DNA from: Ylistrum balloti
Taxonomy: Eukaryota
NCBI RefSeq assembly: GCF_031769215.1
Contig: NW_026781892.1
Location: forward strand, 124,001 to 188,000
Direction: 5' to 3'
DNA: 64,000 bases
Positions 6,700 to 62,240 of the stretch are shown one piece after another (position 1 is the first letter of the stretch; each line of letters opens with the position of its first letter). Below the pieces are notes generated by a model. It had not been told where the DNA came from and did not search any database. It was given only the letters and a program-made list of their open reading frames with translations. A program made the position numbers and the translations under genes.

Positions 6700-7300
6700 A
6701 ATGTTGATCATTAATTTCAGACTGGCATAAGACACTGGTCAGCATAAGTTCCATATTGACAAAGCTGACCAATACCCTCAGAATGACGTAGGAAACAGGT
6801 CAGCATTCATAAGTTTTGGTCCGATGTCCACAAGTTGACCTTTACCCTCATTGGTAGAGGAAACAGCTCAGGCCTTATAAATCTTTAGTCTGAAGCCAAC
6901 AAAGTTGACCTTTACCCTCAGATTGGTAGAGGAAACAGCTCAGGCCTCATAAATCTTTAGTCTGAAGCCAACAAAGTTGACCTTTACCCTCAGATTGGCA
7001 GAGGAAACAACTCGGACTTTATAAACCTTCAGTCCAATTTCCACGAAGTTGACAAATACCCTCAGGCTTGCAGGAAAAGGGTCAGCCCTCATACATATAC
7101 AGTCTGATGTCCATGAAGTTTAAAAATACCCTCAGGCTGGCAAAGGTCAGCCCTTATAACTCTTCAGTCCGATGTCAACAAATTTCACCAATATCGTCCG
7201 GCTGCCGGAAGAACAAGTCAGCCCTCATGAATCTTCAGTCCGATGTCCAAAAGATTGACCAATATCCTCAGATTGGCATAGGAAACTGGTCAGCATACAC
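6700..7300. repeat. Degenerate ~70-72-bp tandem repeat (about 9 copies) overlapping the PIGK stop codon/3'UTR
   Basis: gttgacctttaccctcagattggtagaggaaacagctcagg... and variants. Confidence 0.85.
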
Positions 7301-7337
7301 AAGCTTCTGTGTCTGTTCCTCAACACACGTGTCTTTA
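7268..7337 (-). CDS. PIGK: PIGK probable last coding exon ([23 protein letters not shown])
   Basis: ttgttcgacag acceptor, phase 2; KLVYADQFP resembles the KYAEQLP segment of vertebrate PIGK; TGA at 7270-7268. Confidence 0.72.
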
Positions 7338-13300: not shown

Positions 13301-15413
13301 TGTTTGTATAATAAACTATGTATTAACAGACAGTCATCTAACTCAGTGCTCCAGATAACTTTTTGACATGTGGGGTTTTCACTCCTACCTTTATAAATTG
13401 AGGGGTTTTTTCACCCCTGCCTTCATCAAGTGTATGGGTTTTTCCATATTAGGGTAACACTGAATTTGTAAACATTTTTGACAGCGCCATATTTGCTATG
13501 CGACTGGTTTATAATCACGATCAAGAAAGCGCTTGTTACGAGTTTCGTTTACTTGATAAGTGTCTGTTTGACTTAGATTATTGAGTTTTCTAACTACGTA
13601 ATATTGGAGCCGGACATTGACGCAGAGTCCGGATTTCGCACGGGTTAATGACGCAAATCTTTTTTTTTTCCTAGCGTGAAATTAGAAATATTGTGCGTGA
13701 AAACGCATTCACGCAGGCTATCTGGAGCACTGTAACTCCTGTATAATTATTGTAGTAAGTCTCAGTACATCTTATATAAACTTTGTAGTAAGACAAAGCA
13801 ACTTAATTCAAATATAAAATCTAGGGTAAAGCACAGCCACCTACTTCATATCCCCTGTAATCCACCTCCACATCATCTCCATATACATTGATTTGCTGGT
13901 TGGCATTATTGAAGACAGTTGCTACAACAAAAAAGAGTTTTTAATCATAATGAGAGAGAACAAAATCACCATCATTAATAAAATATCAGTGAGATGATTG
14001 AACATTTTGACAACTAACTTGACCTATCTAGCAGTGAATTGTGATATACCTACGTGTCCAAGGACTGTGGTAACTGGTGGAGGACTGTGAGGTGTGGATA
14101 ATTGTGAGGTACCCACATGGTGGAAGATTGAGAAGTATATATCTAGTGAAGGATTGTGAGGTACAGACCTAGTGGAGGATTGTGAGGTATGTATCTCGAG
14201 GAGGATTGAGAGGCATCTTCCTGGCTGAGGAAAGTGAGTTACCTTCCTTGCTCTGGATTGTGAGATACCTAACTGGCTGAGGATTTCAAGGTACTTCCAT
14301 GGTCACAGCTTATGTGGTACCTACCTGGTCGTGGATTGCGGGGATTACAGGCCATATCATCAGCTACCATCAGGATAATTTGACTGTTGAAGAAGATATG
14401 CTTTCATATCACATCAAGTATTGAATTCTAATGAAAAGAAGGTAACAACAATACACAGAGATGTATTCAATGATCAAGTGGAATTCAAATTCATTAATAA
14501 ATTTTGGAATTGAAAAAGACAATGAATCATTAATCATCAATTAATCAATATATAACAGTTACAGCTATATTAAGCATTAAATTGATGAAATAAAATTATA
14601 TTGCTGATGGAGATATCCACTGTTAAAGCCATAGATATTTATCATACACAAAAACATGATGAAGCAAATTCAGCATTAATAAGATCAGGCTCAGGTTTTA
14701 CACCCATGGGTAGTTGTATAGTAACATGTATATGGAGACTGACCTGTCAGGGATGCCCAAACGTTTGACACTTCTGTAGATGGACAACACATTAGCCACA
14801 TGGCGGTAGTTGAACCAGAATCTGGAGGTGTCCACAAGCACAGCCCAATTGTTTGTATGGCCACTGGTGAAAAATTCATCCGGATTGACCTGAAATGTTG
14901 AAGTCCTACTAATAACCGGTAGTATTTAATATGAACCAGTTTTTCACGTAAAGTGGAGAAAAATCATGAACTCTTAAGGTTGTTAATTACGAGTGTAAAT
15001 CACAATAATTTATTGAATAAAACAATTATGCATTATCGTTCAAAACTGACAGGAATACGTACCACCCGAAAATATAACTAAGGTACCTAAATACTGGACG
15101 TAAAACGCGTTATTTAATGAATAAATAACTAACTAACTAAATAAAAATACTGGGGACTTATTATATCGTAATCGACCGGGAAGGAAATGTTTTCGTCAAA
15201 TCCGGTAACTTCACAATATCGTCGATACGTTGGCAATCTGAAAAGCGAATTTCTCAAAGCGAATGATTTATTAAACATTAACAATAGCGGAGAGTGCCAG
15301 CACAGAGGAAAGGTTCTTACCGATTCAGAATGTGTATGCAAAATAAACAGTGTCAATAAAATCGCTACTTGGAAATACCGACAGCACCCCGGAACTCGTA
15401 TGGGAGCTGCCAT
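7268..15413 (-). CDS. PIGK: GPI-anchor transamidase catalytic subunit (caspase/legumain-like C13 peptidase), complete 10-exon CDS, about 353 aa
   Basis: Exons assembled by hand with GT-AG boundaries and consistent phases: 15413-15321, 14889-14744, 14383-14325, 13921-13845, 13239-13128, 10890-10794, 10004-9887, 8389-8279, 7916-7738, 7337-7268 (1062 nt). Diagnostic motifs: [32 protein letters not shown], catalytic GHGG and [21 protein letters not shown]. Confidence 0.96.
7738..7916 (-). CDS. PIGK: PIGK exon 9 ([42 protein letters not shown]...)
   Basis: 179 nt, phase 0 to 2; the donor position at 7737 is inferred from phase. Confidence 0.9.
8279..8389 (-). CDS. PIGK: PIGK exon 8 ([37 protein letters not shown])
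   Basis: 111 nt, phase 0, GTAAGT donor. Confidence 0.94.
8810..8950. repeat. (TA)n-rich compound repeat
   Basis: atattactgtatac(at)n units. Confidence 0.9.
9887..10004 (-). CDS. PIGK: PIGK exon 7 ([40 protein letters not shown]; catalytic Cys)
   Basis: 118 nt, phase 2 to 0, GT-AG. Confidence 0.95.
10155..10405. repeat. 46-bp minisatellite, about 6 copies
   Basis: agcagtacatatagtaatacccagcaataatggaatagtccataat. Confidence 0.95.
10794..10890 (-). CDS. PIGK: PIGK exon 6 ([32 protein letters not shown]; catalytic His)
   Basis: 97 nt, phase 1 to 2; 3' end of track ORF 10790-11242. Confidence 0.95.
10885..12080 (-). repeat. ~34/35-bp minisatellite containing the PIGK exon 6 splice acceptor, about 35 copies
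   Basis: Minus-strand unit gtctggtgttttggtgcag|gtcatggcattacat. Confidence 0.95.
12080..13090. repeat. 20-21-bp minisatellite
   Basis: gtgtattctgtggtgataggt variants. Confidence 0.93.
13128..13239 (-). CDS. PIGK: PIGK exon 5 ([37 protein letters not shown])
   Basis: 112 nt, phase 0 to 1, GT-AG. Confidence 0.95.
13344..13732. mobile_element. MITE (389 bp) with CAG-starting TIRs and 5-bp TSD, hAT5-like
   Basis: TIR CAGTGCTCCAGATA (13344-13357) / TATCTGGAGCACTG (13719-13732), flanked by TAACT on both sides; in PIGK intron 4. Confidence 0.8.
13845..13921 (-). CDS. PIGK: PIGK exon 4 ([26 protein letters not shown])
   Basis: 77 nt, phase 1 to 0, GT-AG. Confidence 0.94.
14040..14340. repeat. Degenerate ~26-bp repeat related to the PIGK exon 3 donor junction
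   Basis: ggattgtgaggtacctacctggt-like units abutting the exon end. Confidence 0.65.
14325..14383 (-). CDS. PIGK: PIGK exon 3 ([20 protein letters not shown])
   Basis: 59 nt, phase 2 to 1; contains the Cys that links to PIG-T in orthologues. Confidence 0.93.
14744..14889 (-). CDS. PIGK: PIGK exon 2 ([48 protein letters not shown])
   Basis: tttcag acceptor, gtcagt donor, conserved GPI8 sequence. Confidence 0.95.
15321..15413 (-). CDS. PIGK: PIGK exon 1 (signal peptide [31 protein letters not shown])
   Basis: ATG at 15413, hydrophobic signal peptide, GTAAGA donor, 93 nt, phase 0. Confidence 0.88.
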
Positions 15414-15425
15414 TTTGAAGTATAA

Positions 15426-15494
15426 GAATGTGACATTCTGCAGCTCTGAATTTTTTAGTCAGCTTCTAAAATTTATCTTTAGTTTCGTATTTTT
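15426..15494 (+). repeat. Left terminal inverted repeat (69 bp)
   Basis: gaatgtgacattctgcagctctgaattttttagtcagctt...tttagtttcgtattttt; reverse complement of 31117-31185 with 8 mismatches. Confidence 0.88.
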
Positions 15495-17829
15495 ACTGCG
15501 ATTGCGCATCTCACTCACTTCCGTATGCAAAATTGATTTGCCGCGAATATTTTAAACCGAATACAGTGAAATGTTACGACAGCAATTAATTCCCTGTTGA
15601 TTACCGTGGTAATGCATTTATTACAACGCTATGCTATTGCCAAATTAATGTTTTGTTTAGTTTTATACACCTCATATGGTGTTTGATATTTTACCACAAA
15701 TGAAACCCGCCCACCCACATTTATTTGAATCTTCGCTGGCCATTAAAAAGTCGTAGTTATATTTTCCGTCAGAGTTTGATGCATACATATAGTCATAGTT
15801 TCACTGTTAGAAAATAATAGAATTTGGTTTCCATGAAAGGTGTTCTGTACTGAACGTATGATACATTGTATTATACGTCCCTGGTATTTATTTCATTTTT
15901 TTATTCGTCCTTGTTTCAGTCATCCAGTGTTCTCCTGCCTGGAACCATCACGACCATGGATGACCATTTGTAATCTTTGGTAATCTAAAAAAAAAAAATC
16001 ACAATGGAAACAAACTTGTAATCGTGTTATATCACTGTGACAAGTGAGCTGGCTGGTTCCAATGGCATGACTAAATTTATTTGACAGTTCTACATGGATA
16101 GCCTGAATGTGTGTATTTCATGTTTCTGTGTCATATACATAATAAAATGAAGGAAACCCTATCTCATTACAATAGTATGTTAATTATATTCAAATTGTTT
16201 TAGACATTATGATGTATAGATTCTATGTTATAAGGAAAGGGCGTTAACAATACATTACTTGTCTTCTGACAATAAAAAACTGGAAAAATGAAAGGTCAAC
16301 TGTGAAAAACAGATAAACGGATATCAAAGAATGTCTTCACTGCATTTTTGAGAATGCATAGCAATCTACACAATCCATGTATTGAATTAATGAAAATGCA
16401 TAAACACTCATATAAGATCCATATTACTGACCACAGGTGTTGACATCCTGGGGTTTATACAGAGAGCCTATAGGACTTGCTCATAATGTCAAATATTTGT
16501 ATACTTCTGCAAATAGAAGAGAAATTTTAAAAAGGTTTACATTACTTTCCAAGTTCTAGTTCAAGTTTATTGGATCCTCAGATACATGGAAAAAAGAGTA
16601 AAATAAATGGCTAATAATAATGTATTAATGATACGCATCATCTTTTTAACATTTTACCAATAGAAATAGAGATGAAAAAACAATATAGTTAATATACCGT
16701 GTGTACGTTGGTAGAAGCAACCAATAGCCACTCTATACTGTGCTAATTCATTACCCATGGTCATCAAAAGTTACATATGTAAAAGAGTAGCCACCAGTTC
16801 CATCCACCAAAGTTTTACAGTTTGTCAGACTATTGACAATATACCCAGTATTGAGTATAACATAGAGGAGATAAGAACAGAAAAGTCTTAAGATAGGAGA
16901 TAAAGGAAAATAAAATAGGAAAATGTAAAGAGAACACATGGATATCATAGGAGTATCAGGTAGTGTGGTGGAGAACAGATATAACAAACATACAAATTCC
17001 AAGTTTGTAATATAACTTCAGACAAATACTTAATTCGTAATATAGCACCAAACTAATACTAATCTTCAGACGCATACTAAATTATTAATCTTAACATCAG
17101 AAATCGACCAAATTTGTAATAATAATTTCTGATACTGACTTTGTAATATAACATCATAAAATCACCCCTTTGTCATATAACCAACACTATTGAAATGTAT
17201 ACAATAACACACGTGTATACTATACACGCCTATGAAAACGACGATTTTTTTTATGCTTGTCTTCGACGAAGTTCGAGCGTTTTATTTGACGCTGTCGCCA
17301 TTATAGAAAGGTTATTTTTTTACTGTTTTTTTATTAATTTAAATATAACTAATCAGTCACTGAACAAAAATAAAGTACAACATGCAGTAGCAGATATACC
17401 GACATTTTACCTGTAGAATTTTGACGTCCTGACCGAGAATCGACACGGAAAGGACAACGGTTGGAAAATATACATGTATGACAGTATCAAGGCTTGATAT
17501 TTTCCCCGGTTTTGTAAAATATTCGTCCGTCCATTGTCCATAGTGAATGGATGTGGTTGTCTTGTCGCAGTTTATTTAACCGACCGACAAGGGCAGATCT
17601 TGGCTTGGTTAGACTTTCCGTTATACATATTTTGTCTTTGAGATTTTTACAAAGTTTTTTGTTCTGGAAGACCTTGTGTCGGTCAGAGTATCTGACAAAC
17701 CGCGCAATTATCGTTGTCGTGCCATTCCTTATACCTCCAAGAATATGAGACCTGGATAAATCATCTCGAGTAAGGTTTACTTTGATTTCGCGGGCAATGT
17801 TTATAACTGCATCATGAGTATCGAATGAC

Positions 17830-18344
17830 GATATATCTCCCCTGGGGACAGGGACATTGTGATCAGGGCGGTACGTCTAGAGTACTGCTGTTGGTCTTCT
17901 AGTTCCATTTCGAGTTCTCCTATCTTGGATTTTAGTAAGTTCAATTCTGATGCTTGATTTTGGATACGGTCAATGAGTGGAGTTACGTCGTCATTTACAT
18001 GTTTGGTGACTATACTACTCAGTTGGCTATCATTGTTAATGACAGAATTACACTGCACTTTGTATGAGGGGCTGGATAGTGTGAGTAAGCGACTGTTCAA
18101 TTAAATTAGAGACCATTGTTGCTATGGTTGGAGCAAGCATCTGCGCAAAATCGTGCATGAATCCTGACGTAAACATCGAATCATCATTACTAGTCGATCC
18201 TAGGTCAGCACGCTTATTTTCTACTATCTCGGGGGACAGCGGACTGGACATTTGTTTCCGTTTGTCTTTCAAATGTTCGCTAACAGGGGTTGCAAAAACT
18301 AGGGCCTGCTGTAATACGCAGACACGAATCGTCCTTCGACGCAC
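17830..18344 (-). mobile_element. Non-LTR retrotransposon ORF1 fragment (frameshifted, truncated)
   Basis: ORFs 18048-18344 and 17801-18100: KRKQMSSPLSPE N-terminus, coiled coil, and the ELEDQQQYSRR motif typical of LINE ORF1. Confidence 0.55.
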
Positions 18345-19344
18345 TCATCATAAACTTCTGACTACCATACAAATAAAAGTATATCGAAGTCCGTGCAGTG
18401 CTCAATATTATCGATAATGTCGACGTGACTTTATTTAGAATAGGTCACCTTACACTCAGGTATACAAATCACAAATTTGTCAATATTCAAACTATTGCAT
18501 ATCTTGTACAAAAATTTTTGGTCCAATTACATTAAAAAGTTCCTCATGCACACTTACTAGGTTTCAAATTTCAGAAAAACATTCCTTAATATCCGTAATT
18601 AGAAAAAATTATTACCACCACACAAACACCGGTCAGCTCACTCAGGCCATCACGTTTTCCACGCCCTATCACACCAATAAATTACAAAACAAAAATATAT
18701 CGATATCATCGTCATCAAACTCTTGAAATTTTCATCTTTGCGTCCAATGTGTGTTTTTTTTTAGATAAATTTAAGAACCAGGCTTTCCTGGGGCGCTTTA
18801 TTGTTTCAATAACACAGTGTACACCTGAGCTGTGCGTCAGGCACGTGCAAGAATTTTGCGTCCCAAGATTGTATTGACCAATGAAAACGTTAAAGAAAAG
18901 GGACAAGCAATGAGCTTGGACTATTGTGAAATCTGCTCAGTGCTGCGACAAAATGTTAAGCGTTGGGCACGAGACTGGTCATTCAGAAAACACCTGCTGC
19001 GAAACCGACATGTAAGTGACATTTTTCTCATATATTCATGTACTAAGTGTAAAACTTGAAGAAATAAGAATTCCTTTATGTTTTAAACATACCTTTAAGA
19101 TGTATGTTGTGACTGTAGCGTATACACACACGAGAAATAGTACATGTTTGTCCCTTTGTGCGACCCAGTGTGGCCATACAAATCTTATTGTACTCTTGTC
19201 GTGTTGATATCTCATTCTTTTCACGGGAATAACAGAACATTTGTGAGTTCTTACAGCTAAAGAGAGTCTCGCCATAGTCATGTCGTAGTTTAAATTAAAA
19301 CATTGTGATAACCATGGAAATAATTTGTGAGGGAAATTACTGTT

Positions 19345-20090
19345 TTCTGGTATAACAAAGAAACCTTTTAGTCCTAAGATGTATGAAGCCCCCAGTCCTA
19401 TAAAGGTTAATGGGCGGGGTCATTTCTGCTTTCTTATTTATAACAAAACGAATAGTCCTAAGGGGTAAGGATAGCCACCCCAGTCCTATATAATATTTGG
19501 TTTATTGTTGTTTTACGTCCTATCGACAACTAAGGTCATTTAAGGACGTGCCAGGTTTAGATGGTGGAGGAAGCCGGAGTACCTGGGGAAAACCACCGAC
19601 CTGCGGTCAGTACCTGGCAACTGCCCCACGTGAGCCTCGAACACGCGACCCAGAGGTGGAGGGATATAGTGATTAATGACATTACGCCTTAGCCACTTGG
19701 CCACCGCGACCCCCTATATAATATAATGGGCGGGACCATTACTGCTTTCTGTTATAACAAAACGAATAGTCCTAAGGGGTAAGGATTGCCCCCAGTCCTA
19801 TATAAAGGTTCATGAGCGGGATCATTACTGCTTTCTGTTATAAAAGACTAGTAGTCCTCAGGGGTAATGGAGGCCTCAGTCCTATATATAGGTTTTAGGA
19901 CGCGACCATTACTGGTTTCTATTAATAACAAGAGACTCAGTCCTCAGGGGTAAGGATAATCCTCAGTCCATACATAGGTTTAAGGACGGAACCATTACTG
20001 CTTTCTATTATTACAAGTGTTTAATAGTCCTAAGGGGTAAGGATAGTCCCTTCATTATTGATCCCTGTTATAACAAAGAGACTAACATCC
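19345..20090. repeat. Degenerate ~85-bp tandem repeat interrupted by the SINE
   Basis: ataacaaaacgaatagtcctaaggggtaagg...cagtcctatata...ccattactgctttc units. Confidence 0.8.
19497..19714 (-). mobile_element. tRNA-derived SINE (V-domain-like central motif), full length, 218 bp
   Basis: Minus strand: A-box GGTGGCCAAGTGG, B-box-like GTTCGAG, motif GGTTTTCCCCAGGTACTCCGGCTTCCTCC, A-rich tail; 10-bp TSD TATATAATAT (19487-19496 / 19715-19724). Confidence 0.85.
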
Positions 20091-21645
20091 CTAAGTGTAT
20101 AGACGTAAGTCTCGGCCTCCTGGGGAGGGAGGAGCTGGACACAATATGGGAAAGTGAGTGAATGCTTAAAATCCTAGCCCTCCTATCGTTATTCTGGATT
20201 TATATTGCAGATGTTTTACCCTCGTTTCCAACAGCTGATCAAAATATTCCATATCGAATTAAAAAAAATACGATAATAACAAAAAATTGTAATGGCCACT
20301 CACTGTAATGGTGACTTAGCCAGTCTTTGATACAAATGTCATAAATTTTCTGGTTTTAAGAGTTTCAAGTACTCAACAATGTTTCTTCCGAAATCCATTT
20401 CGATTTATGGCCAACTGCAGGGAGCGGGTGATATATTTCATTTTTTTTTTAGTTTTAGTGTTTGCAGTTTTATTACTGGTGGACATTGTTGAAATTGGTC
20501 ACATGACTGTTTAGGTCCAGGGGCCCCTTGTTAAAGAGAAAACATCCATCAGTTGCTTGTTTTATAATCTTAATAAGCTTCAGTACATGAAAGATAAGGA
20601 ATACAGGCTCAATTAGCATTTGGATTTCCAATTTTTGCAGCTCTGTTTCTGTCAAATTAGTTTAAGCATTCAGTTAGATTTCTTGCAATGATTGCATCAA
20701 CTGAATGAAAGCAGAATTTTATTTGAAATGTAATACTTGTAAAGTTTTGATAAAGATAACTTCAAGAAAAAAATAATTTTGGAAATCAAGAGATTTCAAC
20801 ACAAATCAACAATATTTTACAGATGGATCCTTGAAGGAGCTGACCTGGTGTGGATGTACTAGACCTCACATGGCTGCATTGGATTCTGCATTGGATTGGA
20901 GAATTACGGCTACTGGTTGAAAAAATAATCTGCTACAAAATTGAATCAAGACGACAATGTTGATGATGAAGATTAATGAAGATGATGATTGGGATCAATA
21001 CTACCGGCAGGTGTAATTCGGTGTGTATTCTTTGGTTGAGATTGTGATAATAGACACTAACAGTGTTTCTCTTTAACTGCCCCATCCAATCCAACCCGGC
21101 CATTGTCTATATTTGCAATATTACCGGCAAGTTTGGCCTCTGGTATCGTTTGTTGTGATTCAGTGGGTATTCCTCATAATATTTTACGGCTTAATACTGC
21201 GATGAGCTGACCATGCATGGCTGTACTGGAGCTGTTGTAGCTGATTACCTTCGCCTGGCTGCCCTGGATTGGAGGATCATGGCTGTAGGTTGCAGTGAGG
21301 TACATTTGTACCGAGTTTAGGTTTGTTTTGATTAATTGAATAATTGGTGGGCTTACAAAGGTGTTCAATTTGATCACGATGAATGTCAAATAGTGTGAAT
21401 GTTTTGTTGAAAACTCTTCTAAAATCATTTGTGTGTGATTTTTTTTTTAGATTTTTTGTCGAAATAATCACCATGGTGGTGGATTATCACCGATTTTACC
21501 AAAACTGGTGTGTATTTAGTGTTTTTGTTGATAATCTAAAATAATTGATAATCTTATAATAATGTTTTACAGCTTAATCCAGGGTTGCCCTGGATTGGAG
21601 GGTCGTGGCTGAAGGTTGCAGTGAAGCTTTCTTTACAACATTACA

Positions 21646-22860
21646 CAGCCTGCAAATCAGGCATTCGATTTTTCGTCCATAGCGGCGTTCGGTTATCAAC
21701 GGTTTTATCCCCATCTTTGGTAAGACGGTGTTATTATCAATTAATCAAATATATTCACACTTCTCAGACTTATATATTGCAGGTCCGGCGACAGGTACAG
21801 GCCGACGTCCCTGGAAGTGAACTGGTCGGTCAGGTACATTTTTACCAAAATAGAGGTACGTAGGCTCTCTCTTCTAAACCTGTTGAAGGAATGAAGTCTA
21901 TATTGTGTGTCAGACTGAAGTTCTTACAAGGCTACATTTAGACCCTACTGGGAACTCTAGCAATTGGAGGACTGGACGAAGTTGGTTTTTTCATCAGGTC
22001 CGCTCAAACTGTGTACTTCTCCAACATCGCAAGTTCCTTCGGCAGGTAAATGTCCGTGAGTCGTATACAGATATTTCTCCGAACATGTGGGGATTTCAGT
22101 TGGCACGCATTCAGTGCAGAAATCGTTATTCCATACACACTCATGGGATGAGAATGTTTTGTATGTGGCTTAGCAGGGTTTTCTTGCTTTGAGGGGTTGT
22201 GAAACAGGAGTCGAATACGGTGCGACTCGGCTGATAGATCGACCGAGTTCATAATTCGATTGTGACGAGAGAAGGTATGGTGTTTGTTTGCGCCGAATTT
22301 GAGCTTTTTTCTGTACATGGTGTTCTCTTCCCCTGCGAACAGTGTTAAAGTTGATACAAGCAGCGGAGCTTTGTTTTCAACAATACGCGGCCTGCAAATC
22401 ACAGGCAATCGGTTTTTCGTCCATAGCGGCGTTCGGTTATCGACGGTTTTACCCCCATCTTTGGTAAGACGGTGTTATTATCAATTAATCAAATATATTC
22501 ACACTTCTCAGACTTATATATTGCAGGTCCGGCGACAGGTACAGGCCGACGTCCCTGGAAGTGAACTGGTCGGTCAGGTACATTTTTACCAAAATAGAGG
22601 TACGTAGGTTCTCTCTTCTAAACCTGTTGTAGGAATGAAGTCTATATTGTGTGTCAGACTGAAGTTCTTACAAGGCTACATTCAGACCCTACTGGGAACT
22701 CTAGCAATTGGAGGACTGGACGAAGTTGGTTTTTTCATCAGGTCCGCTCAAACTGTGTACTTCTCCAACATCGCAAGTTCCTTCGGCAGGTAAATGTCCG
22801 TGAGTCGTATACAGATATTTCTCCGAACATGTGGGAATTTCAGTTGGCACGCATTCAGAG
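21646..22860. repeat. Tandem duplication, 744-bp period (about 1.6 copies)
   Basis: 21648 gcctgcaaatcaggcattcg... recurs at about 22390; the duplicated ORFs 21585-21863/22284-22607 and 21905-22192/22649-22882 are near identical. Confidence 0.9.
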
Positions 22861-23290
22861 CAGAACTCGTTGCTGTCATTGAGTTGACCATACCGTGGAT
22901 GGAAAGAACAGAAGCAGCCCATGAGAGGAAGAAAATCCAAGTATGAAGAGCTACTGGCAGAATGCAGGGAGAAAGGCTGGAAAACTTGGAACTTCCCGGT
23001 AGAGATTGGGTGTAGAGGCTTCCCAGCACCGTCTGCTTGGAGAATGCTCAGTGCACTGGGTGTTACCGGCTTCACTAGAAGAAGGGCAGTGCAGCGGCTC
23101 ACCCAGGCAGCAGAGAGGGCATCCTGTTGGGTTTGGATGAAGAGGGACGAGAGTAGCTGAAGACCCACCACCGACACGCAGTGACTGATCACCACTGTGG
23201 ACCCCCTCCCCCCATACTGAGTGTATCGAGTAAGGGGTCGAAACACGCGATGAAGGATGGCCTCGGCTGAGGACGTCGGCGGTGTAGCAG
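22855..23290 (+). mobile_element. 5'-truncated HERO/R2-clade non-LTR retrotransposon (restriction-like endonuclease C-terminus plus 3'UTR)
   Basis: VAVIELTIPWMERTEAAHERKKSKYEELLAECREKGWKTWNFPVEIGCRGF...AAERASCWVWMKR*, followed by a 3'UTR with gtcgaaacacgcgatga. Confidence 0.8.
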
Positions 23291-24597
23291 CAATTCCATC
23301 TAGCTGGTTGTACGTACCAGAACTGAGGTAAAGATAATTAACAAACCAGTTCTTGAGACAATGATGAATGGTAACTCTTTCCTACACCAGGGAAGATCTG
23401 AAAAAGATCCAAGGACATAAGAACCTATAACTGACCACCTTAGGCCGGAGGATCTCGACTGAAGGAAAGATTGTGAATATGACAATGATATACCCCTTGT
23501 ATAGACTACTGATATTAACACCCGTGGTGTAATTTGATGTAACACAAGTAAAAATGATGCTGCAGAAATATATTTGAATTAATGTGATTGTAATTATTGT
23601 AGGTGAAATAAAATGTCCGGTGGAAGGACTGAAATCTCAAATCCCGTGTCGGCGAGTCACACTTGGCACGTTAAATAGAACAGGCTAGTTAGGTATATAA
23701 TAGTTGTAGTGGTAGGTTAGGAATTCTGTGACACTCCAAATAATATATATTTTTTTCTCCCTTTCTTAAAGACAAATTGTTTTGGGCTCCAATCTTTGTA
23801 ATAAAACAAAATCGGTTATATCATTTCTGTGAGAAATTGTAAAGCACTAAAATTAAGCAATGGCAGTTTGCCTATAATTTTGCCTCTCCTTCTAATAAAA
23901 AAATCTTCTGTATTTGTTTGGGTTTGCATGAAACTGAAATGATATCCATGTTTGCTACTAAAAAAGCATGCCATGTAGTAAAACTTTTGAAATTAATAAA
24001 TCAAAAATAGTACCGGTTATATCTCTGTCTTCGACATTGCGTAAGCAGTGAAATAGATTGAATTCAACGTGATCAATGTCACAATGTCATAGGTCAAATA
24101 ATGGCAAATGTTTTATTTCTTTAAAACTTTAGAATACTTACAATGTTATAGATAATTACAGAATTATTTGGGCAGCAAATGTGATAAAAAAAACTCGCAT
24201 CAAGTACAGGCATATGCTGCACTGCAATCGGGTTTCAGTAAAAGGAAAATTAGGAACCCAATTTACAAATGCAAAAAAAGTTCTGAAATATTTGTTAAAT
24301 TCATATTGAGATAAGAATAGAATATTATTTATTTTAGAACAGATTAGATGAATAAAACTTTTTTTTTTAATGTTGCTTTTTTTTGCTAGCTTAAAGTAGT
24401 GGTCCTTTAATGAGGAGGCCTCCACGTGGCAAGGACTGGAAACAGCTTACACTCATTATTGTTAGTAGGCTGGCTGACATCCTCATGCAATATGTTGAAT
24501 TTTAGGAACAATTATAAATCATGCTTTTTATTTATTTTCAAAAGTTTTGCATGATACATAAGAAAAACAAGAAATGACATGCATACCAACATTCACG

Positions 24598-24651
<54 letters not shown>

Positions 24652-24763
24652 CAATCAATTCATCATCATCATTCTCCATCCATTCATCATCATCCATCAA
24701 TCCATTATCCTTAATCAATCCATCATCATCCTCATCCTCAATCAATCCATTATCCTCCATCCA

Positions 24764-24810
<47 letters not shown>
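24598..24810. repeat. (CAT)n compound trinucleotide microsatellite
   Basis: Two long CAT runs with a degenerate middle. Confidence 0.97.
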
Positions 24811-25167
24811 GAATGTCCATTGGTTCTATAAAGTTAGATATATCATTTCCAGCATCACAACAATGTAAGTAGTTTCTATAGACATGAAATATTGGGATAC
24901 ATTTCACCCGAGGATGAATTGCTTCATACATCGAACACCAGACTGATAAGTTGCAGTTGAGAAAGGAATTAAATTAGCTGGTTTTTCATGCTGTTGGTCT
25001 AAATAGAATGAAACGACACCAAAATGGTATACTCTTTACTTTGAATTTCAGGTAATGTTTTCAATAGTAGATATTTCTGCTTCAGGAATCATGGTTTTAT
25101 TTCAGGAATTACATCCTTTACCAACAATCAATACACACAGCATTCATCATACATATTTCGATAGTTT

Positions 25168-25560
25168 TAACAAGAGGCCCATAGGACATGTATCACTCAC
25201 CTGGCTATATAATATGCCTACAGGTTGGATACTTGAATTATTTCCCATAGAGGTTAATTCTTATATTGTAACTGTCTTTCTCTTTTAATGCCCAGTAAAA
25301 GTTTATAGTTATTGGGCTGGGATCTCAACTGTTTTAAAGATAAGAAACAAGAAAGTAAGTCCCTAGAGGTGTGCCACATCCAAGGGTCAGTTCTTACATC
25401 ATGAATGTATTATATCACTTGATGCCAAGCAATTAGATATATGGTTATGGGTTGGGATTTAAAACTGTTTCAAAGATATAACCCTGAAACTAAGTACCGA
25501 TGGGTGGGGCCAGACCTAAGTGCTATTTCATGATTGTGTTTATGTTACACAATAAGGTAT
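25168..25560 (+). mobile_element. Degenerate bivalve-type interspersed repeat (Helentron/HINE-like terminus)
   Basis: aacaagaggcccataggacatgtatcactcacctg; a related copy starts near 29186 with similar downstream sequence. Family assignment is from recalled terminus motif only. Confidence 0.4.
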
Positions 25561-28500
25561 TGATATTTATATATCAATTTATTCAACTTATTGTAGGATT
25601 AGTATCGGGAAGTAGGACACTGTAGCTAAGTCATGGTTCTGTAGTAGATCAATTAAATAGGCTAATTATTATTGGTGATAGGCGAGGAGTGCAGTAGCTC
25701 AGGGTTTGTAGAGCATGTGGTGTAAATTATACTATCAGGCGGAACGGGCGTAGCTTCCTTGATAATCAAACTTATGCAATTGCCCATTCGGACAGTGACC
25801 ACTAGGTGTTAAGAGTAATTATCAAGGGCTATTTCCAGTAACAAACTAAGTAGGGGGAATCTCAACCTCGCACCTCGAGCATGGATGGTTATACTTCAAC
25901 AATCAAATCAGCTTGCAACAAGTGAAGTCCATATAAGGGGATCGCGGGACATAATCGGTCAAGATGAGATAAATAGAAGCTAGATTCTGGGGATAGGACA
26001 GAAGGGGTTTGGACACCCGACTGCACGGTCATAGATGGCTTAGAGAAGGGATTGGGACACCCCAATAGATGGGCCCTAGGTAGCCCACCAGACAAGCTCC
26101 CATACAGGTTATACCATGATGGCTTGTATAAGGAGTGGTTATGTTAGTATATACCTAGAAGTACTGTTTTTATGCAAGGACAGTTTTGATACAGAGACTG
26201 TTTTATGAGACACAATGCGAAGTGGAGTGAATATATGTGTATGTTGATGAGATGTTGCCTTTGTACATGACTATTAACATCTAAATAGACATGACTATTA
26301 CCAACAGTTATGTGTTACGCCACTGTGTTACAGTTTATCGCTTGATGCCCATCAATGCTATGTGCATATGGTCATGGGAGCAGAATTTTGACTGTTTCAG
26401 AATTTAAGAATTAAACCTCACCCCAAATAATATTTCAGACCTAATTTGGTTGAAATCTTGGGTTTTAAGCAGGAGTCGTGTTTTAAAGGAAAAGTTTACA
26501 CATGGCAATTGACAATGCACGATAGCAATAGGTCATCTGTACCCTTTGGGTAAATATAAATTATTAAGTATTGTCTAAATATAATTATAGTCACTATGAT
26601 AGTAAGATTCTCTTCCAATTAATTTTCCACGAAACCTAGGTAACTTGCAATCATCAATAATAATGACATTTTGGAAACATTTACTTCACAAATTCCTTAC
26701 AAAATTCTGCTTCACATTAAATAAAACACTATAAATTTCCACGTATAGTGCACACCTTTTCTTAGTTTAAAGTGTTTTGTCGAAAAGGGGGTGCATACTC
26801 CACAGGAATATGCCATTCTTAGGGTTATTCTCGAGTTCTCTGATCCGCCATATTGGACTACCCCCTTCACCCAGTTAGAGGCATCTGTCATATATGATAG
26901 ACTGAAGATAAAAACAAAGAATAAAACAAATTTTGAATGTTTTAATGCAAATAAGTTTCATTATTATTTATATAAAGCTAAGTAACAAAAAGTTTTAAAT
27001 TTTATCAGAACAGGTTCAATAGTACTTACGACTTGCACAAATGGAACAGTAGACCGATAAATCCATACAGCACCAAGTAATTATAAGCAGTTTTTAGTAC
27101 TGAAGTCGCTTAACACAGTCACAGATCACTTAACAAAAATCCTTCAAATTCCTCATCATCGTCACTGTTAAAGAAGGATGCCACATCAAAGTTTGCCTCT
27201 ATAGTATTTTCATTGTCGTGTTAAAAGAGGTCGTCATCCATCATCCTCCAAGTCAACATCAATGGTGGGTCCACTATCATGGGTCATCTGTTCACAGAAC
27301 GTCCAATCCCATTGCTGCTTTGAAAGTGGTGACCTTATGACCTCTCTGAATCTGCATCTGTAAAACAATTTCATCTCACATTCATTTATTAGATATTTGA
27401 CTAAAAACTTAAGTATTTTTATCTTAACAACATAAATCAAATGAACTTCTACCATATATGACGGTAAGATGGAATTTGTTTTTCTTATGTTGGGAACATC
27501 AAAAAAGCCTCGAGAAAATTTCTAATAAGCTAAGGTATTTCTTTATGCATGTACAGACCATCCTGCAAAAGATACCAGTATTCCTGTAACCAAACCTGCC
27601 AATGTTCTAGAGGTAAGCTATCAATGGTTTCCTGTACTTTATCTATTAAATACAAATGAATACAATAACCAATGATAAGAAAAGTATGTACATGTGTATA
27701 TCATATGTGTATATCAAGATCAAAAGGTATTACCCTGCATCTTCGCAAAAACGTACATTAAAATTCCATATAATAGCAAAAATATCAAAGGAGATATACA
27801 ATGTTTCAAAATATACAGAGAGAGTGTGAAGCATCATGAATGTCTACCAAAAGCATAATTACCTATCAATGGTTTGTTTAGACATCAGGATAATACAGCA
27901 TTGTTTTAACTGAAAATTTTTTACACAGGACACCTTAAATGTTGGAGAAAACTATATTTGAATATGTTAAATTAGTTTTTTGAACATGGATCTTTTGTTT
28001 TGATAATCTGTGGAATCCTCGGGTATGCTGCATTTGTTCAAATGCACAATCTATGCATTCTAACATACCATCAGCACATCAATTATGTCAGGCTAGTGTG
28101 AATCAGATGTGGGATAAATATGATTAAGCTTTATTTGACTCCTGTATGCTGAAGATGACCCTGGGGCCATGAAATTCACAACTTTGGTAAGCACTTTAAG
28201 ATGCTTTCAGTTATGAAAAGTGTTTGATTCTACAATACCTGGGTGCTGAGAAGAAGACTTTAGAAATCGGAGTCAATTTGACCCCACCCTTCAGGGCCCT
28301 GTAGGATAGGGACTGTATAATTCACAATTTTTGTTCATCTTAGGCCAGGAAAGGTTACTGCAAAGGTGATAGCAATAGGTCACCACGAGGCCCAATAATT
28401 CAAATGACCTAACTAAAGGGAATCTAGATATAAGTAAGAGAAATATCCCTATATTACTTCAAAAAATGATAGCAAGGATTGTTTATGGATGAACAGACCT

Positions 28501-28704
28501 GAGATTAAGGGCAATTTTAACAGCTCACTATCTAATGATGGGCTAGAAATGTCTAAATGTTTACACCTGAAGCCTGAGGAACATCATTTAGACAAGATCA
28601 TAAAATATGACAACAGTGTCTGCAATGACTTGATATTTAATACAAACATACTTTAACACTTTAACTGTCTGCTATGCAAATCATACTGAAGACTGAACTT
28701 GTTT

Positions 28705-28858
28705 CAGGGCTCTCGATCTGCCAGATTTGGGGCCAATAGTCGGCCCCATTCCCAGTGCAAAATAGTATCTTTTTTCCCAATTATAAGGAAAACGCCATTA
28801 TTTTTCCCAATTCTAAGGGCCCCGGGCCCCAGTCCCAAAATGGGGTGTGAGAGCCCTG
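28705..28858. mobile_element. MITE (154 bp) with CAG-starting TIRs and 5-bp TSD
   Basis: TIR CAGGGCTCTC / GAGAGCCCTG, flanked by TGTTT on both sides. Confidence 0.7.
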
Positions 28859-30599
28859 TGTTTTAGCTGGATCCAAATAGCTGTCCATCTGTGTAACTGG
28901 TGTGCTGAAGACCATGATGATGGGATCAAAATAGAGTGATTTGATCACAGGGTCATGTGTTGTCCATTGTCTACCTGAAAAAGAGACAAGTGAATCATAA
29001 ACAACATTAAAAATCAAAACAGATAGTACTGATTGAGAATATAAATAAAACAAATTGCTTGAATAACCGTGTAACTATATATTTACCTTTGATATTACCA
29101 AATGCATTAGAGATTACATTAATTTTTGCTTAACAACAATGATCTGATCACAGCAGCTGCACTGTACAGTAAGTAGTACACTAAGAACAAAGGTCCCATA
29201 GGCCTGTATTACTCACCTGGATCTTAAAGCCCAGTAATGGTACACATGCCTTTAGGTTGGGTATTTCAAATATTTCTAAATTAAAACTCAATCAATTAAA
29301 CCCTTTCATGTCGAAAGACCAATGAGTAAATTCTTGTATCATTACTGTCTTTCTCTTTTGATGCCAAGTAAGAGTTTATATGGTTATTGGGTTGGTATCT
29401 TGGCTATGTCAAAAATATGACCCAGAAATAATGTCCCTAAAGGTGTGCCATACTTAAGAGGACATTCTTGCATAACAAATGTGTTGATCTCTTGATATCA
29501 ATAAATTCTATATATATAATGTTATGAGGGAGATTTCCACCATTTTAAAGGTATAACCTAAAAATTAAGTTCAGAGTTCTTCATCATAAATGTGTTTATC
29601 TCTTAATGCCCAACATGGTATCTATAGATATGGGATGGGGATCTCAACTGTTTCAATAATATAACACAGAATCTGTCTCAAGGTGTGGAGCCAGGCCCAA
29701 GGGCCAATTTTAAATGACTTACTGAATCAAAACATAGGAAATCGAGCAATAATAAGATAGCCCTCTGACAGCCATTTTGTATAACTGATGAGATAAAATA
29801 AATGACTTATGATGTATTTTACAAATCTTCAATGAAATGAAAATGAAATGAAATGTTTCATCACTAACTTGCTTATTTTGCAAGTATATGTAAAAATATA
29901 AGTGAAAATATCACAATAAAATGACATTTTTGCTCTTTTGCCAATATTCTGTTTTAATTGACAGAAAAATTTCAGAACATACCAGTAAATACATAGAGAG
30001 AATTCAAGCTCCATGTAGATCTGAATTATGGGAAAACTTAAAAATGGCATATGACATTATATACTTGGTTAGAACTTAAGCTCAATGTGGAGTTAAACAA
30101 CTCTAAACATGGCGCAAGTTATCAATTTAAGTCCAGTTAACAGAAGTAAACTGCAGGTGGAAATAAGAATTTAAACTGTTTGTTGGAATGGCCATACAGA
30201 GATATAAAAACATTCCAAACTTGGTTTATGACGACAACTTATAAAGTTCCAAGCTAACCAGAAATTTAACATGCTGCAATTAATCAATAAATTCAAGTTA
30301 ACTGTATTTAAACTGTATGTGAAATCTGTTTGGTTATTATAGATATTCTGTTTTGTTATGATTGGTTTTTGTATTTGATGAGAAATTAACACTGATGTGG
30401 AGTGTTACACAAAAACTGAAGATTTTTCTAATTATATTGACATTTCAATTATCTTAACCATCTGACACATGTTTTCAGAGTATGATTTAGATGTGTGAAA
30501 ACTGCTTCTGACTTTTAACTAAAAGGTATAGAAATTATTTTATGGATCCAAATATGCACTAAAAATATCTCATTTAAACTAAATTTAGAAACAGATTGG

Positions 30600-30809
30600 T
30601 CATGTCAACAATAATTCAAGTTGTTTTCCTATATTATCTACAGTAATTTTATCTTTAAATGTACGCAAGGCAGCCAGGACCTCGTATATGCAGTCAACTA
30701 TACAACCACTTCTCCAAAGAAATTTGGATACTGTGGTGCCACAGATCAACTCATCATTATCATTCAATTGCCTTATATGCGAGGATCCTACAACTGCTAT
30801 CCTAACCAT
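30600..30809 (-). pseudogene. SGNH/GDSL hydrolase-like gene fragment inside the putative MULE
   Basis: MVRIAVVGSSHIRQL resembles SGNH block I (GxS-H) and FLWRSG resembles block II; block III is missing; preceded by a short intron-like gtacgt...ttaag. Confidence 0.35.
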
Positions 30810-31116
30810 ATTTTCAGAACAAAATCTGCTTTTGAATTGGCTTAACAAACGAGAAATAGAATGTTTTACGTACCCACGTGCTTGTAGACCGGCGTGAAAA
30901 GAAGTTTCAAACTTTCGAAATACTTTAATTTCGTTCGGGGAGTATGTCTCGGGATCATAGCAGTTACTTTTAAGGTACGTTTATACCAGGTTTCTGCAGT
31001 GTTCTGATAGGCAGGCTTGAAATTTACGTTATTTGTATGATTAAAATGGTAACCGCATGTGGCATTAAGTGAAAAAAGTATTAAGTATTGTAAACTGTAT
31101 AGTACATTTTAGTGGA

Positions 31117-31185
31117 AAAAATACGAAACTAAATAATAATACTAAAAGCTGACTAAAAAATTCAGAGCTGCACAATGACACATTC
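31117..31185 (-). repeat. Right terminal inverted repeat (69 bp)
   Basis: Includes a 27-bp perfect match aagctgactaaaaaattcagagctgca (31146-31172) to the reverse complement of 15439-15465. Confidence 0.88.
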
Positions 31186-31577
31186 GAAGTATAGTATATA
31201 TCACTCCGCGTATTTCAGTTTCCAGCAAACCTGCACTTTTTCTTATATTCTTTTTCTTTATTTCAAGTAAGATAACAAGTATTCAGAACTATGCCCAAAA
31301 ATGCGATACGCTGAATATAAAACAGTAGTATTGCACCTCTTATTACTTTATGAATCATTAAAAAATCAAGAACTTATTTTTCAGTATATGTGGCACACCG
31401 GAAGAAGATAAGTCCGCCAATTTTTGTTGTCCTTGGATACAGGCTGTTCTGTGCAGGTGCCCCATGAGAGTCTAAGTTGGAAAGTGATTTCCGACAATTC
31501 ATTTTACCAAACCGTAGAAAACAACCGACAAGATACCACGCAAAAAAGACTCGTACATTCGTGTCCGTAGTGGCAAG
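31186..31577. promoter_or_regulatory. AK5 proximal promoter/5'UTR; probable remnant of the PIGK-AK5 bidirectional promoter
   Basis: Lies between the right TSD and the AK5 ATG. Removing the element leaves 395 nt between the two divergent start codons. Confidence 0.5.
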
Positions 31578-31637
31578 ATGACTACGGATGATGCGAAATC
31601 CTATCTGTCAAAAAGACAGATCCCTCGACTCTTTGAG
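31578..31637 (+). CDS. AK5: AK5-like exon 1 (MTTDDAKSYLSKRQIPRLFE)
   Basis: aagATG start, GAG|GTGAGT donor, 60 nt. Confidence 0.92.
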
Positions 31638-61479: not shown

Positions 61480-62240
61480 ATGTTGTATAGTGTTACCTGT
61501 CTATAAGGTACTCTGTATACCATACAAATATCCACTTTATAGTGTTATCTGTCTATAAGGTACTCTGTATACTATACAAATATCCACTTTATAGTGTTAT
61601 CTGTCTATAAGGTACTCTGTATACTATACAGATATCCACTGTATAGTGTTACCTGTCTATAAGGTACTCTGTATACTATACAAATATCCACTTTATAGTG
61701 TTATCTGTCTATAAGGTACTCTGTATACTATACAAACCTGTCTATAGGGTACTCTGTATACTATACAAACCTGTCTATAAGGTACTCTGTATACTATACA
61801 AACCTGTCTATAAGGTACTCTGTATACATGTCTATAAGGTACTCTGTTTACTATACACACCTGTCTATAAAGTACTCTGTATACAATACAAACCTGTCTA
61901 TAAGGTACTCTGTATACTATACACACCTGTCTATAAGGTACTCTGTATACTATACAAACCTGTCTATAAGGTACTCTGTATACTATACAAACCTGTCTAT
62001 AAGGTACTCTGTATACTATACAAACCTGTCTATAAGGTACTCTGTATACCATACAAATATCCACTTTATAGTGTTATCTGTCTATAAGGTACTCTGTATA
62101 CTATACAAACCTGTCTATAAGGTACTCTGTATACTATACACACCTGTCTATAAGGTACTCTGTATACTATACACACCTGTCTATAATGTACTCTGTATAC
62201 CATACAAATATTCCCTGTGTAGTGTTACCTGTCTATAATG
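61480..62240. repeat. Compound 33-bp/~52-bp minisatellite
   Basis: ctgtctataaggtactctgtatactatacaaac. Confidence 0.94.

What the first reader, a model, noticed from the sequence alone, without database searches (positions are those of the whole stretch)
15417..31194. A 15.8-kb Mutator-like element appears to have split a compact PIGK/AK5 bidirectional promoter
Seen in sequence: 69-bp ungapped inverted repeats (61/69 identical, G-terminal) at 15426-15494 and 31117-31185. They are flanked exactly by GAAGTATAA / GAAGTATAG (8/9). Deleting the element plus one TSD copy leaves only 395 nt between the divergent PIGK and AK5 start codons. Established: 9-bp TSDs with long TIRs characterise the Mutator/MULE superfamily, and Mutator favours 5' gene ends. 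Inference: the whole intergenic region is one very large, transposase-less MULE carrying cargo and nested TEs, something like a Pack-MULE in an animal.
Basis: partly seen in the sequence, partly recalled or inferred. Interest (0 to 1): 0.92.

Follow-up and report, generated by a model that had tools for sequence, protein, structure and literature searches.

The report
Old transposon between PIGK and AK5
A 15.8-kb transposase-less DNA transposon, probably Mutator-like and full of other repeats, sits 12 bases upstream of the start codon of the essential gene PIGK; the insertion is real but old, is present in every sample examined, and is an ordinary kind of event.

Summary
The 69-nt inverted repeats (61/69) lie at 15426-15494 and 31117-31185. 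They are flanked exactly by GAAGTATAA / GAAGTATAG. Removing the element plus one flank copy leaves 395 nt between the divergent PIGK and AK5-like start codons.

Public contigs show that the repeat and its subterminal DNA are multi-copy in this genome. So this is a real transposon family, and one insertion event explains the matching flanks (chance about 2e-4).

Four samples from two organism labels all carry the filled site, with no branch at the right junction. The insertion looks fixed and old; other copies are about 88% alike.

Forty interior ORFs gave no transposase and no host-gene domain. The interior contains retroelement fragments and a very abundant 154-bp MITE. "Nested TEs" is supported. 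"Cargo / Pack-MULE" is not.

The Mutator assignment rests only on target-duplication length, repeat length and a terminal palindrome like that of the mosquito MULE Muta1. No autonomous partner could be sought, so Merlin and similar superfamilies remain possible.

"Split promoter" overstates the geometry: AK5 keeps 383 nt of the old spacer and PIGK keeps 12 nt. PIGK probably starts transcription inside the element's CpG-rich left end, but no RNA data were available.

The scan had not noted this repeat elsewhere. This is a new member of a known kind, of modest interest.

The parts
15417..15425 (.). Left target-site duplication, GAAGTATAA
   Evidence: Abuts TIR-L exactly and matches the right copy at 8/9.
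15426..15494 (+). Left terminal inverted repeat (TIR-L). Its first 13 nt, GAATGT-G-ACATTC, form a perfect palindrome.
   Evidence: Chance of the palindrome about 3e-4.
15426..31185 (.). Whole element, 15,760 bp: non-autonomous TIR DNA transposon, MULE-like
   Evidence: TIRs plus TSD. No ORF longer than 226 aa and no Pfam transposase in 40 ORFs. The right 4.5 kb is multi-copy in four runs.
31117..31185 (-). Right terminal inverted repeat (TIR-R)
   Evidence: Summed contig depth over its part of the bin is roughly 37-62 times that of the unique flank.
31186..31194 (.). Right target-site duplication, GAAGTATAG
15321..15413 (-). PIGK exon 1 (ATG at 15413, 31 codons, donor GTAAGA at 15320). Only 12 nt separate the ATG from TIR-L.
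31195..31577 (.). What remains of the pre-insertion PIGK/AK5 spacer, 383 nt, all on the AK5 side
   Evidence: Unique-depth contig in all four runs.
31578..31637 (+). AK5-like exon 1 coding part (MTTDDAKSYLSKRQIPRLFE, donor GTGAGT)
15426..16000 (-). CpG-undepleted left end of the element (CpG o/e 1.07-1.55; window median 0.26), with an ETS-like CGGAAGTG on the PIGK strand near 15508-15521. Candidate present-day PIGK promoter.
   Evidence: The promoter role is inference only.
30501..31185 (.). CpG-undepleted right end of the element (o/e 0.79-0.86), continuous with the AK5 5' region
30818..31147 (.). Subterminal region shared with at least one other genomic copy: a 335-nt contig with 40 substitutions and 9 gaps, about 88% alike, seen in X1, X3 and X5
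   Evidence: records 6, 15 and 30.
28705..28858 (.). Nested 154-bp MITE with 10-bp TIRs (CAGGGCTCTC / GAGAGCCCTG) and a 5-bp TSD TGTTT (28700-28704 and 28859-28863). Very high copy.
   Evidence: Sequence. Loose ends fall exactly at 28705 and 28858 in all four runs, and depth is about 1800-2600 times that of the flank.
28157..28364 (.). Truncated copy of another abundant repeat (summed depth about 200 times the flank)
   Evidence: depth table, and loose ends with a consensus at 28157, 28190 and 28364.
17490..18344 (-). Frameshifted LINE ORF1-like fragment (coiled coil plus an RRM-like part)
   Evidence: ORFs. Atlas feature hits at 0.90-0.94, including Transposase_22 clusters. No Pfam hit.
21618..22871 (+). 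Two 512-bp direct repeats, 96% identical (21618-22127 and 22360-22871); part of a nested retroelement remnant
22888..23157 (+). Peptide 67% identical to an ORF lying directly downstream of RVT_1 ORFs on another contig; a retroelement C-terminal fragment
19336..20050 (.). 86-bp tandem repeat array plus a diverged outlier copy

Best explanation
The 15,760 bp at 15426-31185 are one non-autonomous cut-and-paste DNA transposon with 69-bp imperfect terminal inverted repeats.

It integrated once into the short spacer between the head-to-head PIGK and AK5-like genes. The site was 12 nt upstream of the PIGK ATG, and integration duplicated a 9-bp (or 8-bp) target.

The element belongs to a low-copy, diverged family. 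There are roughly ten copy-equivalents of the subterminal DNA and several tens of the TIR, at about 88% identity. The element is old: it is present, with no empty allele seen, in four samples from two closely related organism labels.

Its size is at least partly due to other repeats inside it: a very abundant 154-bp MITE with its own TSD, LINE and RT-element fragments, and tandem repeats. It does not come from captured host genes.

By TSD length, TIR length and a terminal palindrome, the most likely superfamily is Mutator (MULE), at about even odds. The family would be moved in trans by a transposase encoded elsewhere.

Shown: TIRs, TSD, multi-copy status, filled site in all samples, absence of recognisable coding capacity, nested repeats.

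Inferred: the superfamily; that nested insertions account for the bulk of the length; and that PIGK, whose exons are intact, now initiates transcription within the CpG-rich left end of the element.
For: - TIRs: 61/69, with exact ends. None expected by chance.
- TSD: 8/9 at fixed positions, P about 2e-4.
- Filled site: in each of X1, X3, X4 and X5, one contig runs from 31140-31143 inside TIR-R across the junction to 32497 with 7-9 differences (in X5 as two abutting contigs, records 31 and 32). The flank depth equals that contig's depth, so there is no branch at the junction.
- Multi-copy: interior 26600-31130 has summed depth 80-500 against 20 in the flank (X1). Another copy of 30818-31147 is 88% alike. 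The TIR part is at roughly 37-62 times flank depth.
- No coding capacity: no Pfam family above cutoff in 40 interior ORFs of 72 aa or more. No Rfam family and no tRNA.
- Nested repeats: the MITE with its own TIR and TSD, the LINE ORF1-like fragment, and the RT-linked peptide.
- MULE features in the literature: TSD 8-11 bp and TIR 14-500 bp; Spectre has 74-bp TIRs with an 8-bp TSD (PMC6446971). Muta1 makes both 8- and 9-bp TSDs and has a terminal palindromic motif (PMC5225508).
- PIGK is intact, with its catalytic His and Cys.
- CpG o/e of 1.1-1.5 extends about 575 nt into the left end.
Against: - No transposase, and no autonomous relative, could be examined, so the superfamily is unproven.
- No second copy was seen with both ends and its own TSD.
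- The summed contig depth is, by the tool's own warning, not a true copy number.
- There are no subterminal short repeats of the kind many MULEs carry.
- The TIRs differ at 8 of 69 positions and the TSD at 1 of 9, so part of the argument rests on decayed signals.
- No RNA run was found, so the promoter statement is untested.
- It is not known how much of the 15.8 kb was present at the time of insertion.
Confidence: 0.7

Rival explanations
1. The same single TIR-transposon insertion, but the family belongs to another superfamily with 8-9-bp target duplications. Candidates are Merlin (8-9 bp), or hAT, P or Zisupton if the true TSD is the 8-bp GAAGTATA plus one stray base.
For: - The flanks can be read as a perfect 8-bp repeat plus one extra A on the left.
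- No transposase is available to decide.
- Repbase classifies non-autonomous elements only by TSD length plus matching terminal bases to an autonomous element (PMC4455052). That test could not be run.
- Unchecked first-stage notes report hAT and P elements in this genome.
Against: - From established knowledge, hAT ends usually start with C/T-A-G/A and P ends with CA. Here the end is GAATGTG.
- The 8-mer does not fit the hAT nTnnnnAn target pattern on either strand.
- A 69-bp TIR with a terminal palindrome, and a TSD readable as either 8 or 9 bp, is what the animal MULE Muta1 shows.
Confidence: 0.22
2. Not one element: two separate, truncated copies (or solo ends) of the same family happen to face each other in inverted orientation. 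The DNA between them is ordinary intergenic sequence plus unrelated repeats, and the flank match is chance.
For: - The TIR is present in tens of copy-equivalents, so two independent ends in 16 kb are not impossible.
- Nothing but the 69 nt is shared between the two ends.
- The interior is a patchwork of different repeats.
Against: - An 8/9 match of the 9 nt abutting the exact outer ends has probability about 2e-4.
- Removing the segment restores a compact 395-nt head-to-head spacer with the PIGK ATG next to it.
- No other copy of the TIR lies in the 64-kb window.
Confidence: 0.05
3. A Pack-MULE-like or composite element: two family ends mobilised a large block of captured host DNA, so the cargo moved as a unit.
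For: - The large size without a transposase.
- MULE derivatives commonly carry heterogeneous internal sequence.
- Pack-TIRs exist in animals (PMC8277862).
Against: - No host-gene domain in 40 interior ORFs.
- The one interior ORF searched for relatives, 30603-30980(-), found none.
- The 4.5 kb that could be checked is all multi-copy repeat DNA, including nested elements with their own TSD.
- Animal Pack-TIR captures are small, with a median of 224 bp.
Confidence: 0.05

Closest known systems
Non-autonomous derivatives of animal MULEs, e.g. Muta1 of Aedes aegypti (PMC5225508) and Spectre of aphids (PMC6446971)
   Same: - Long TIRs (Spectre 74 bp, here 69 bp).
- TSD of 8 or 9 bp.
- A palindromic motif at the very terminus (Muta1).
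- Transposase-less derivatives with heterogeneous interiors.
- Insertion near genes.
   Different: - Muta1 TIRs are 145 bp with 12-bp subterminal tandem repeats; none were found here.
- Those derivatives are small; this one is 15.8 kb.
- Those families have a known autonomous member; here none could be sought.
Maize Mu insertions in promoters and 5' UTRs, including Mu-suppressible alleles such as hcf106::Mu1, where transcription starts from the TIR (from memory; not checked in a paper here)
   Same: A Mutator-type element a few bases upstream of a start codon. The gene can stay functional if the element's end supplies an outward-reading start site.
   Different: That is a plant case with a 1.4-kb element, genetically demonstrated and polymorphic. 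This is an animal case with a 15.8-kb element that looks fixed, and there is no transcript evidence.
Pack-MULEs and Pack-TIRs (rice; 370 Pack-TIRs in 100 animal genomes; Ssk-FB4 in Drosophila; PMC8277862)
   Same: TIR-bounded, transposase-less elements with a foreign interior.
   Different: The defining feature, a captured non-TE host fragment with an identifiable parent, was looked for at the domain level and not found. The interior here is other repeats.
Merlin superfamily elements (8-9-bp TSD; from established knowledge)
   Same: TSD length; occurrence in invertebrates; TIRs that can be tens of bp or longer.
   Different: No transposase or terminal-sequence comparison was possible. A terminal palindrome has been described for a MULE, and I know of none for Merlin.

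Membership tests
Mutator / MULE superfamily | Target-site duplication of 8-11 bp, commonly 9 | tested here: met
   9 nt with 8/9 identical, or 8 nt perfect, abutting both TIR ends. Range taken from PMC6446971 and PMC5225508.
Mutator / MULE superfamily | Long terminal inverted repeats (14-500 bp, often more than 100) | tested here: met
   69 nt, 88%.
Mutator / MULE superfamily | MULE DDE transposase in the element, or in an autonomous relative sharing the termini (Repbase rule: same TSD length and terminal positions 1-11 with at most 1 mismatch) | not testable with these tools
   No transposase domain in 40 interior ORFs. The host genome cannot be searched. Metagenome pattern scans gave 0 hits. 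The rule is from PMC4455052.
Mutator / MULE superfamily | Several family copies, each with its own TSD of the same length | tested here: inconclusive
   Multi-copy status of the TIR and subterminal DNA is shown. The flanks of other copies were not listed, because the loose-end table was truncated.
Pack-MULE / Pack-TIR | Interior contains a captured non-TE host gene fragment with a parental copy elsewhere | tested here: not met
   No host-gene Pfam domain in 40 ORFs. The checked interior is repeat DNA. A nucleotide search for parental copies in the genome was not possible.
hAT superfamily | 8-bp TSD fitting nTnnnnAn, and short TIRs starting C/T-A-G/A | tested here: not met
   GAAGTATA fits the pattern on neither strand. 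The TIR starts GAATGTG and is 69 nt long. The consensus itself is from established knowledge, not from a tool.
Merlin superfamily | 8-9-bp TSD plus an IS1016-like transposase in autonomous members | tested here: inconclusive
   The TSD length fits. The transposase is not testable.
Bidirectional promoter (head-to-head gene pair less than 1 kb apart) | Divergent start sites within about 1 kb in the pre-insertion state, with shared regulation | tested here: inconclusive
   The reconstructed ATG-to-ATG spacing is 395 nt. No transcription start data were found, and no empty allele or alignable orthologue was found.

The most novel reading that the evidence does not exclude
After the insertion cut PIGK off 12 nt upstream of its ATG, the element's own left end took over. 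This is the TIR plus about 0.5 kb of CpG-undepleted subterminal DNA carrying an ETS-like site. It became the sole promoter of an essential housekeeping gene and was fixed in at least two closely related taxa. That would be an animal counterpart of the outward-reading Mu TIR promoters of maize.
Probability: 0.35. Interest if true: 0.5.

Novelty: new member of a known kind. Interest (0 to 1): 0.27.

Why it matters
This is a clean, datable example of a large non-autonomous DNA transposon fixed in the 5' region of an essential gene in an invertebrate.

If transcript data show that PIGK now starts inside the element, it would document promoter replacement by a DNA-transposon end in an animal. It would also show how an ancient head-to-head gene pair can be pulled 16 kb apart without loss of function. 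PIGK and AK5 are neighbours in human too.

As it stands, it mainly adds one uncharacterised TIR family to the repeat catalogue of this genome.

Tried and rejected
- **Other copies of the TIR.** None in the window. Two exact-pattern scans of metagenome contigs gave 0 hits. Earlier notes searched by sequence and by words gave nothing.
- **RNA evidence for the PIGK start site.** No RNA run holds the locus.
- **Empty site in relatives.**
  - An exon-2 search of 1.8 billion representatives was followed by contig look-ups.
  - These returned only distant PIGK loci: exons 70-83% identical at the DNA level, introns and upstream DNA not alignable, and no AK5 exon in the 1 kb upstream.
  - A full-length search seeded with a bird PIGK returned only vertebrates.
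- **Exact look-ups of two window ORFs at the left junction.** Not on record.
- **Relatives of the subterminal ORF 30603-30980(-).** None found. Its weak Sulfotransfer_2 hit (E=0.018, below cutoff) was discarded.
- **Structured RNAs or tRNA-derived SINEs in 14000-33000.** None.
- **Subterminal short repeats shared by the two ends.** None.
- **Whole-window direct-repeat scan.** It only returned intronic minisatellites.
Full report
**1. The observation**

Positions 15426-15494 and 31117-31185 form a 69-nt ungapped inverted repeat with 61 of 69 positions complementary. A local alignment of the inner 400 nt of both ends shows that the similarity stops at 69 nt.

The terminal 21-, 23- and 40-mers occur only at these two places in the 64-kb window, with zero expected from dinucleotide-preserving shuffles.

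The nine bases abutting the outer ends are GAAGTATAA (15417-15425) and GAAGTATAG (31186-31194). The positions are fixed by the repeat ends, so an 8/9 match has a probability of about 1.6e-4 from composition and 2.6e-4 empirically in this window.

The first 13 nt of the left arm, GAATGT-G-ACATTC, are a perfect palindrome (chance about 3e-4). The right arm keeps 4 of the 6 pairs.

**2. The neighbours**

*PIGK (minus strand).* Left of the element lies PIGK.
- Exon 2 matches the human GPI transamidase chain 7w72_K at E=5e-24.
- Seven exons align to a bird PIGK at 58-83% identity. The catalytic GHGG and DTCQ motifs are intact.
- Exon 1 is a 31-codon signal-peptide-like segment. Its ATG is at 15413 and it ends at a GTAAGA donor.

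*AK5-like gene (plus strand).* This gene lies to the right of the element.
- The ATG is at 31578 and exon 1 ends at GTGAGT.
- The N-terminal part is RIIa/Dpy-30-like. This is a weak atlas lead of 0.77, though from memory it is very similar to the human AK5 N-terminus.
- There are two AK1-type adenylate kinase domains.

*Spacing.* The ATGs are 16164 nt apart. Removing 15426-31194 leaves 395 nt.

PIGK and AK5 are also adjacent in human, at 1:77.09-77.22 Mb and 1:77.28-77.56 Mb (table in PMC13163323). Their divergent orientation there is from my memory.

**3. Is it a transposon family, and is the site polymorphic?**

It used Logan contigs of three samples of organism A and one of organism B.

*Right junction.* In each of the four runs, one contig starts inside the right TIR (31140-31143). 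It crosses the junction at 31185/31186 and continues to 32497 with only 7-9 differences. In X5 this path is two abutting contigs, records 31 and 32.

The flank depth (20.5, 14.9, 31.7, 8.4) equals that contig's depth. So the assembly graph has no branch at the junction. All four samples carry the filled site, and no empty allele was seen.

*Interior.* Inward of about 31143 the contigs shatter. The summed depth rises to 80-500 in X1, several-fold to 25-fold above the flank.

A 335-nt contig that is about 88% alike covers 30818-31147 in X1, X3 and X5. This is another copy of the subterminal region.

*Rough copy estimates.* By my arithmetic, the TIR part of the junction bin is at roughly 37-62 times flank depth. 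The subterminal 200 nt are at about 9-13 times.

The tool warns that summed depth is not a copy number, so these are only rough copy-equivalents. They still show that the TIR and its neighbourhood are repeated in the genome.

*Age.* The flank contig does not break within the outermost 43 nt of the TIR. So no other copy shares exact 31-mers there. This fits an old, diverged family rather than a recently active one.

Organism B's contigs also contain near-identical interior pieces: 30007-30210 with 2 differences and 30539-30768 with 1 difference. The insertion therefore predates the split of the two labels, or they are one population.

**4. What is inside**

There is no ORF longer than 226 aa stop-to-stop. 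Forty ORFs of 72 aa or more gave no Pfam family above cutoff: no transposase, no zinc finger, no host-gene domain. No Rfam family or tRNA was found.

Recognisable pieces are other repeats:
- **MITE, 28705-28858.** 154 bp, with 10-bp TIRs (CAGGGCTCTC / GAGAGCCCTG) and its own 5-bp TSD TGTTT. Its ends coincide with the loose ends of hundreds of contigs in all four runs. Its depth is about 1800-2600 times that of the flank.
- **Abundant truncated repeat, 28157-28364**.
- **LINE ORF1-like fragment, 17490-18344, minus strand.** It is frameshifted.
- **Two 512-bp direct repeats**, 96% identical.
- **Retroelement peptide, 22888-23157.** It is 67% identical to an ORF lying directly downstream of RVT_1 ORFs on another contig.
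- **86-bp tandem array and a CAT microsatellite**.

"Nested TEs" is therefore supported. "Cargo" in the Pack-MULE sense is not.

How much of the 15.8 kb was present when the element inserted cannot be told. Only the MITE has a demonstrable TSD of its own.

**5. Superfamily**

- MULEs have 8-11-bp TSDs and TIRs of 14-500 bp. The aphid MULE Spectre has 74-bp TIRs with an 8-bp TSD (PMC6446971).
- The active mosquito MULE Muta1 makes both 8- and 9-bp TSDs. It has a palindromic motif at the very terminus of its TIR and many transposase-less derivatives with heterogeneous interiors (PMC5225508).
- The present element matches on TSD length, TIR length and the terminal palindrome. The 8-versus-9 ambiguity of its flanks is also what Muta1 shows.
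- It lacks the subterminal tandem repeats of many MULEs.
- Repbase assigns non-autonomous elements by TSD length plus identity of terminal bases 1-11 to an autonomous element (PMC4455052). That test needs the genome and could not be run.
- hAT is unlikely: the target and the terminal bases do not fit its known consensus.
- Merlin (8-9-bp TSD) cannot be excluded.

I put MULE at about even odds and "some cut-and-paste TIR transposon inserted once" at about 0.9.

**6. The promoter claim**

The geometry is as stated, but "split" is generous. The cut lies 12 nt from the PIGK ATG, so 383 of the 395 nt stayed with AK5. PIGK lost essentially all of its upstream DNA.

PIGK looks functional and the insertion looks fixed. 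So PIGK must do one of two things. It may start transcription inside the element. Or it may be transcribed from the old promoter across 15.8 kb and spliced.

Soft evidence favours the first option:
- CpG o/e is 1.07-1.55 over 15001-16000 and 0.79-1.19 over 30501-32000. The window median is 0.26, and values just inside the element ends are 0.09-0.25. CpG-undepleted islands therefore extend about 0.6 kb into each end of the element.
- An ETS-like CGGAAGTG lies on the PIGK strand about 100 nt upstream of the ATG.

If transcription starts further inside, the TIR end contributes an out-of-frame upstream ATG 24 nt before the real one. This can be read from the sequence.

No RNA run holds this locus, so none of this is tested. 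The family's ends may simply be CpG-rich in all copies.

**7. Comparison and novelty**

DNA transposons in promoters and 5' UTRs, large non-autonomous elements swollen by nested insertions, MULEs in animals, and Pack-TIRs in animals are all documented. The Pack-TIR record is 370 in 100 genomes, plus a Drosophila Pack-MULE (PMC8277862).

This is a new, uncharacterised family member of a known kind. The only potentially notable point is promoter replacement at an essential gene within a conserved head-to-head pair, and that remains an inference.

**8. Limits**

- Only the right junction was laid on reads.
- The loose-end and piece tables were truncated, so flanks of other copies were not seen.
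- The host genome and close relatives were not searchable with the tools given.
- Orthologous loci retrieved were too distant to align outside exons.
- Earlier notes of this scan held nothing on this repeat elsewhere. One sibling note on this window (s1-240661) proposes the TIR-as-promoter idea, which I could only address indirectly.

Noticed in passing
window 28700-28863: A complete 154-bp MITE with 10-bp TIRs (CAGGGCTCTC / GAGAGCCCTG) and a 5-bp TSD TGTTT. Its summed contig depth is about 1800-2600 times that of unique DNA in four runs. A hAT-like terminus with a 5-bp rather than 8-bp TSD echoes an earlier unchecked note on this genome (s1-262787).
   Followed up: partly
window 1-15413 (-) and 31578-56000 (+): PIGK and an AK5-like gene lie head to head here. 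They are also adjacent in human (1:77.09-77.22 Mb and 1:77.28-77.56 Mb, PMC13163323). This looks like ancient conserved microsynteny between an invertebrate and vertebrates. The human orientation is from memory.
   Followed up: partly
window 15414-15450 (- strand): The end of TIR-L places an ATG 24 nt upstream of, and out of frame with, the PIGK start codon. The resulting uORF of 23 codons overlaps the real ATG. It matters only if transcription starts further inside the element.
   Followed up: no
window 15001-16000 and 30501-32000: CpG observed/expected of 0.8-1.5, against a window median of 0.26. These islands at the two gene starts reach about 0.6 kb into each end of the element. A third CpG-rich patch at 17001-18500 covers the LINE ORF1-like fragment.
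   Followed up: partly
window 1-1700, 3978-5250, 10056-13150, 32521-33324, 37680-39300, 44100-46250, 47080-47530, 50490-52080, 61640-64000: Introns of both genes are packed with long minisatellites, with periods of about 42-44 nt among others. They generate long spurious ORFs.
   Followed up: no
window 21618-22127 and 22360-22871: Two 512-bp direct repeats, 96% identical and 232 bp apart. They lie next to a retroelement C-terminal peptide. They may be LTR-like or split-direct-repeat ends of a DIRS/Ngaro-type remnant.
   Followed up: partly
L002/L003 (Logan contigs SRR26065862 / SRR26065861): A distant species has a compact PIGK with at least five exons within about 1.8 kb. No AK5 first exon was recognisable in the 1 kb upstream.
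   Followed up: partly
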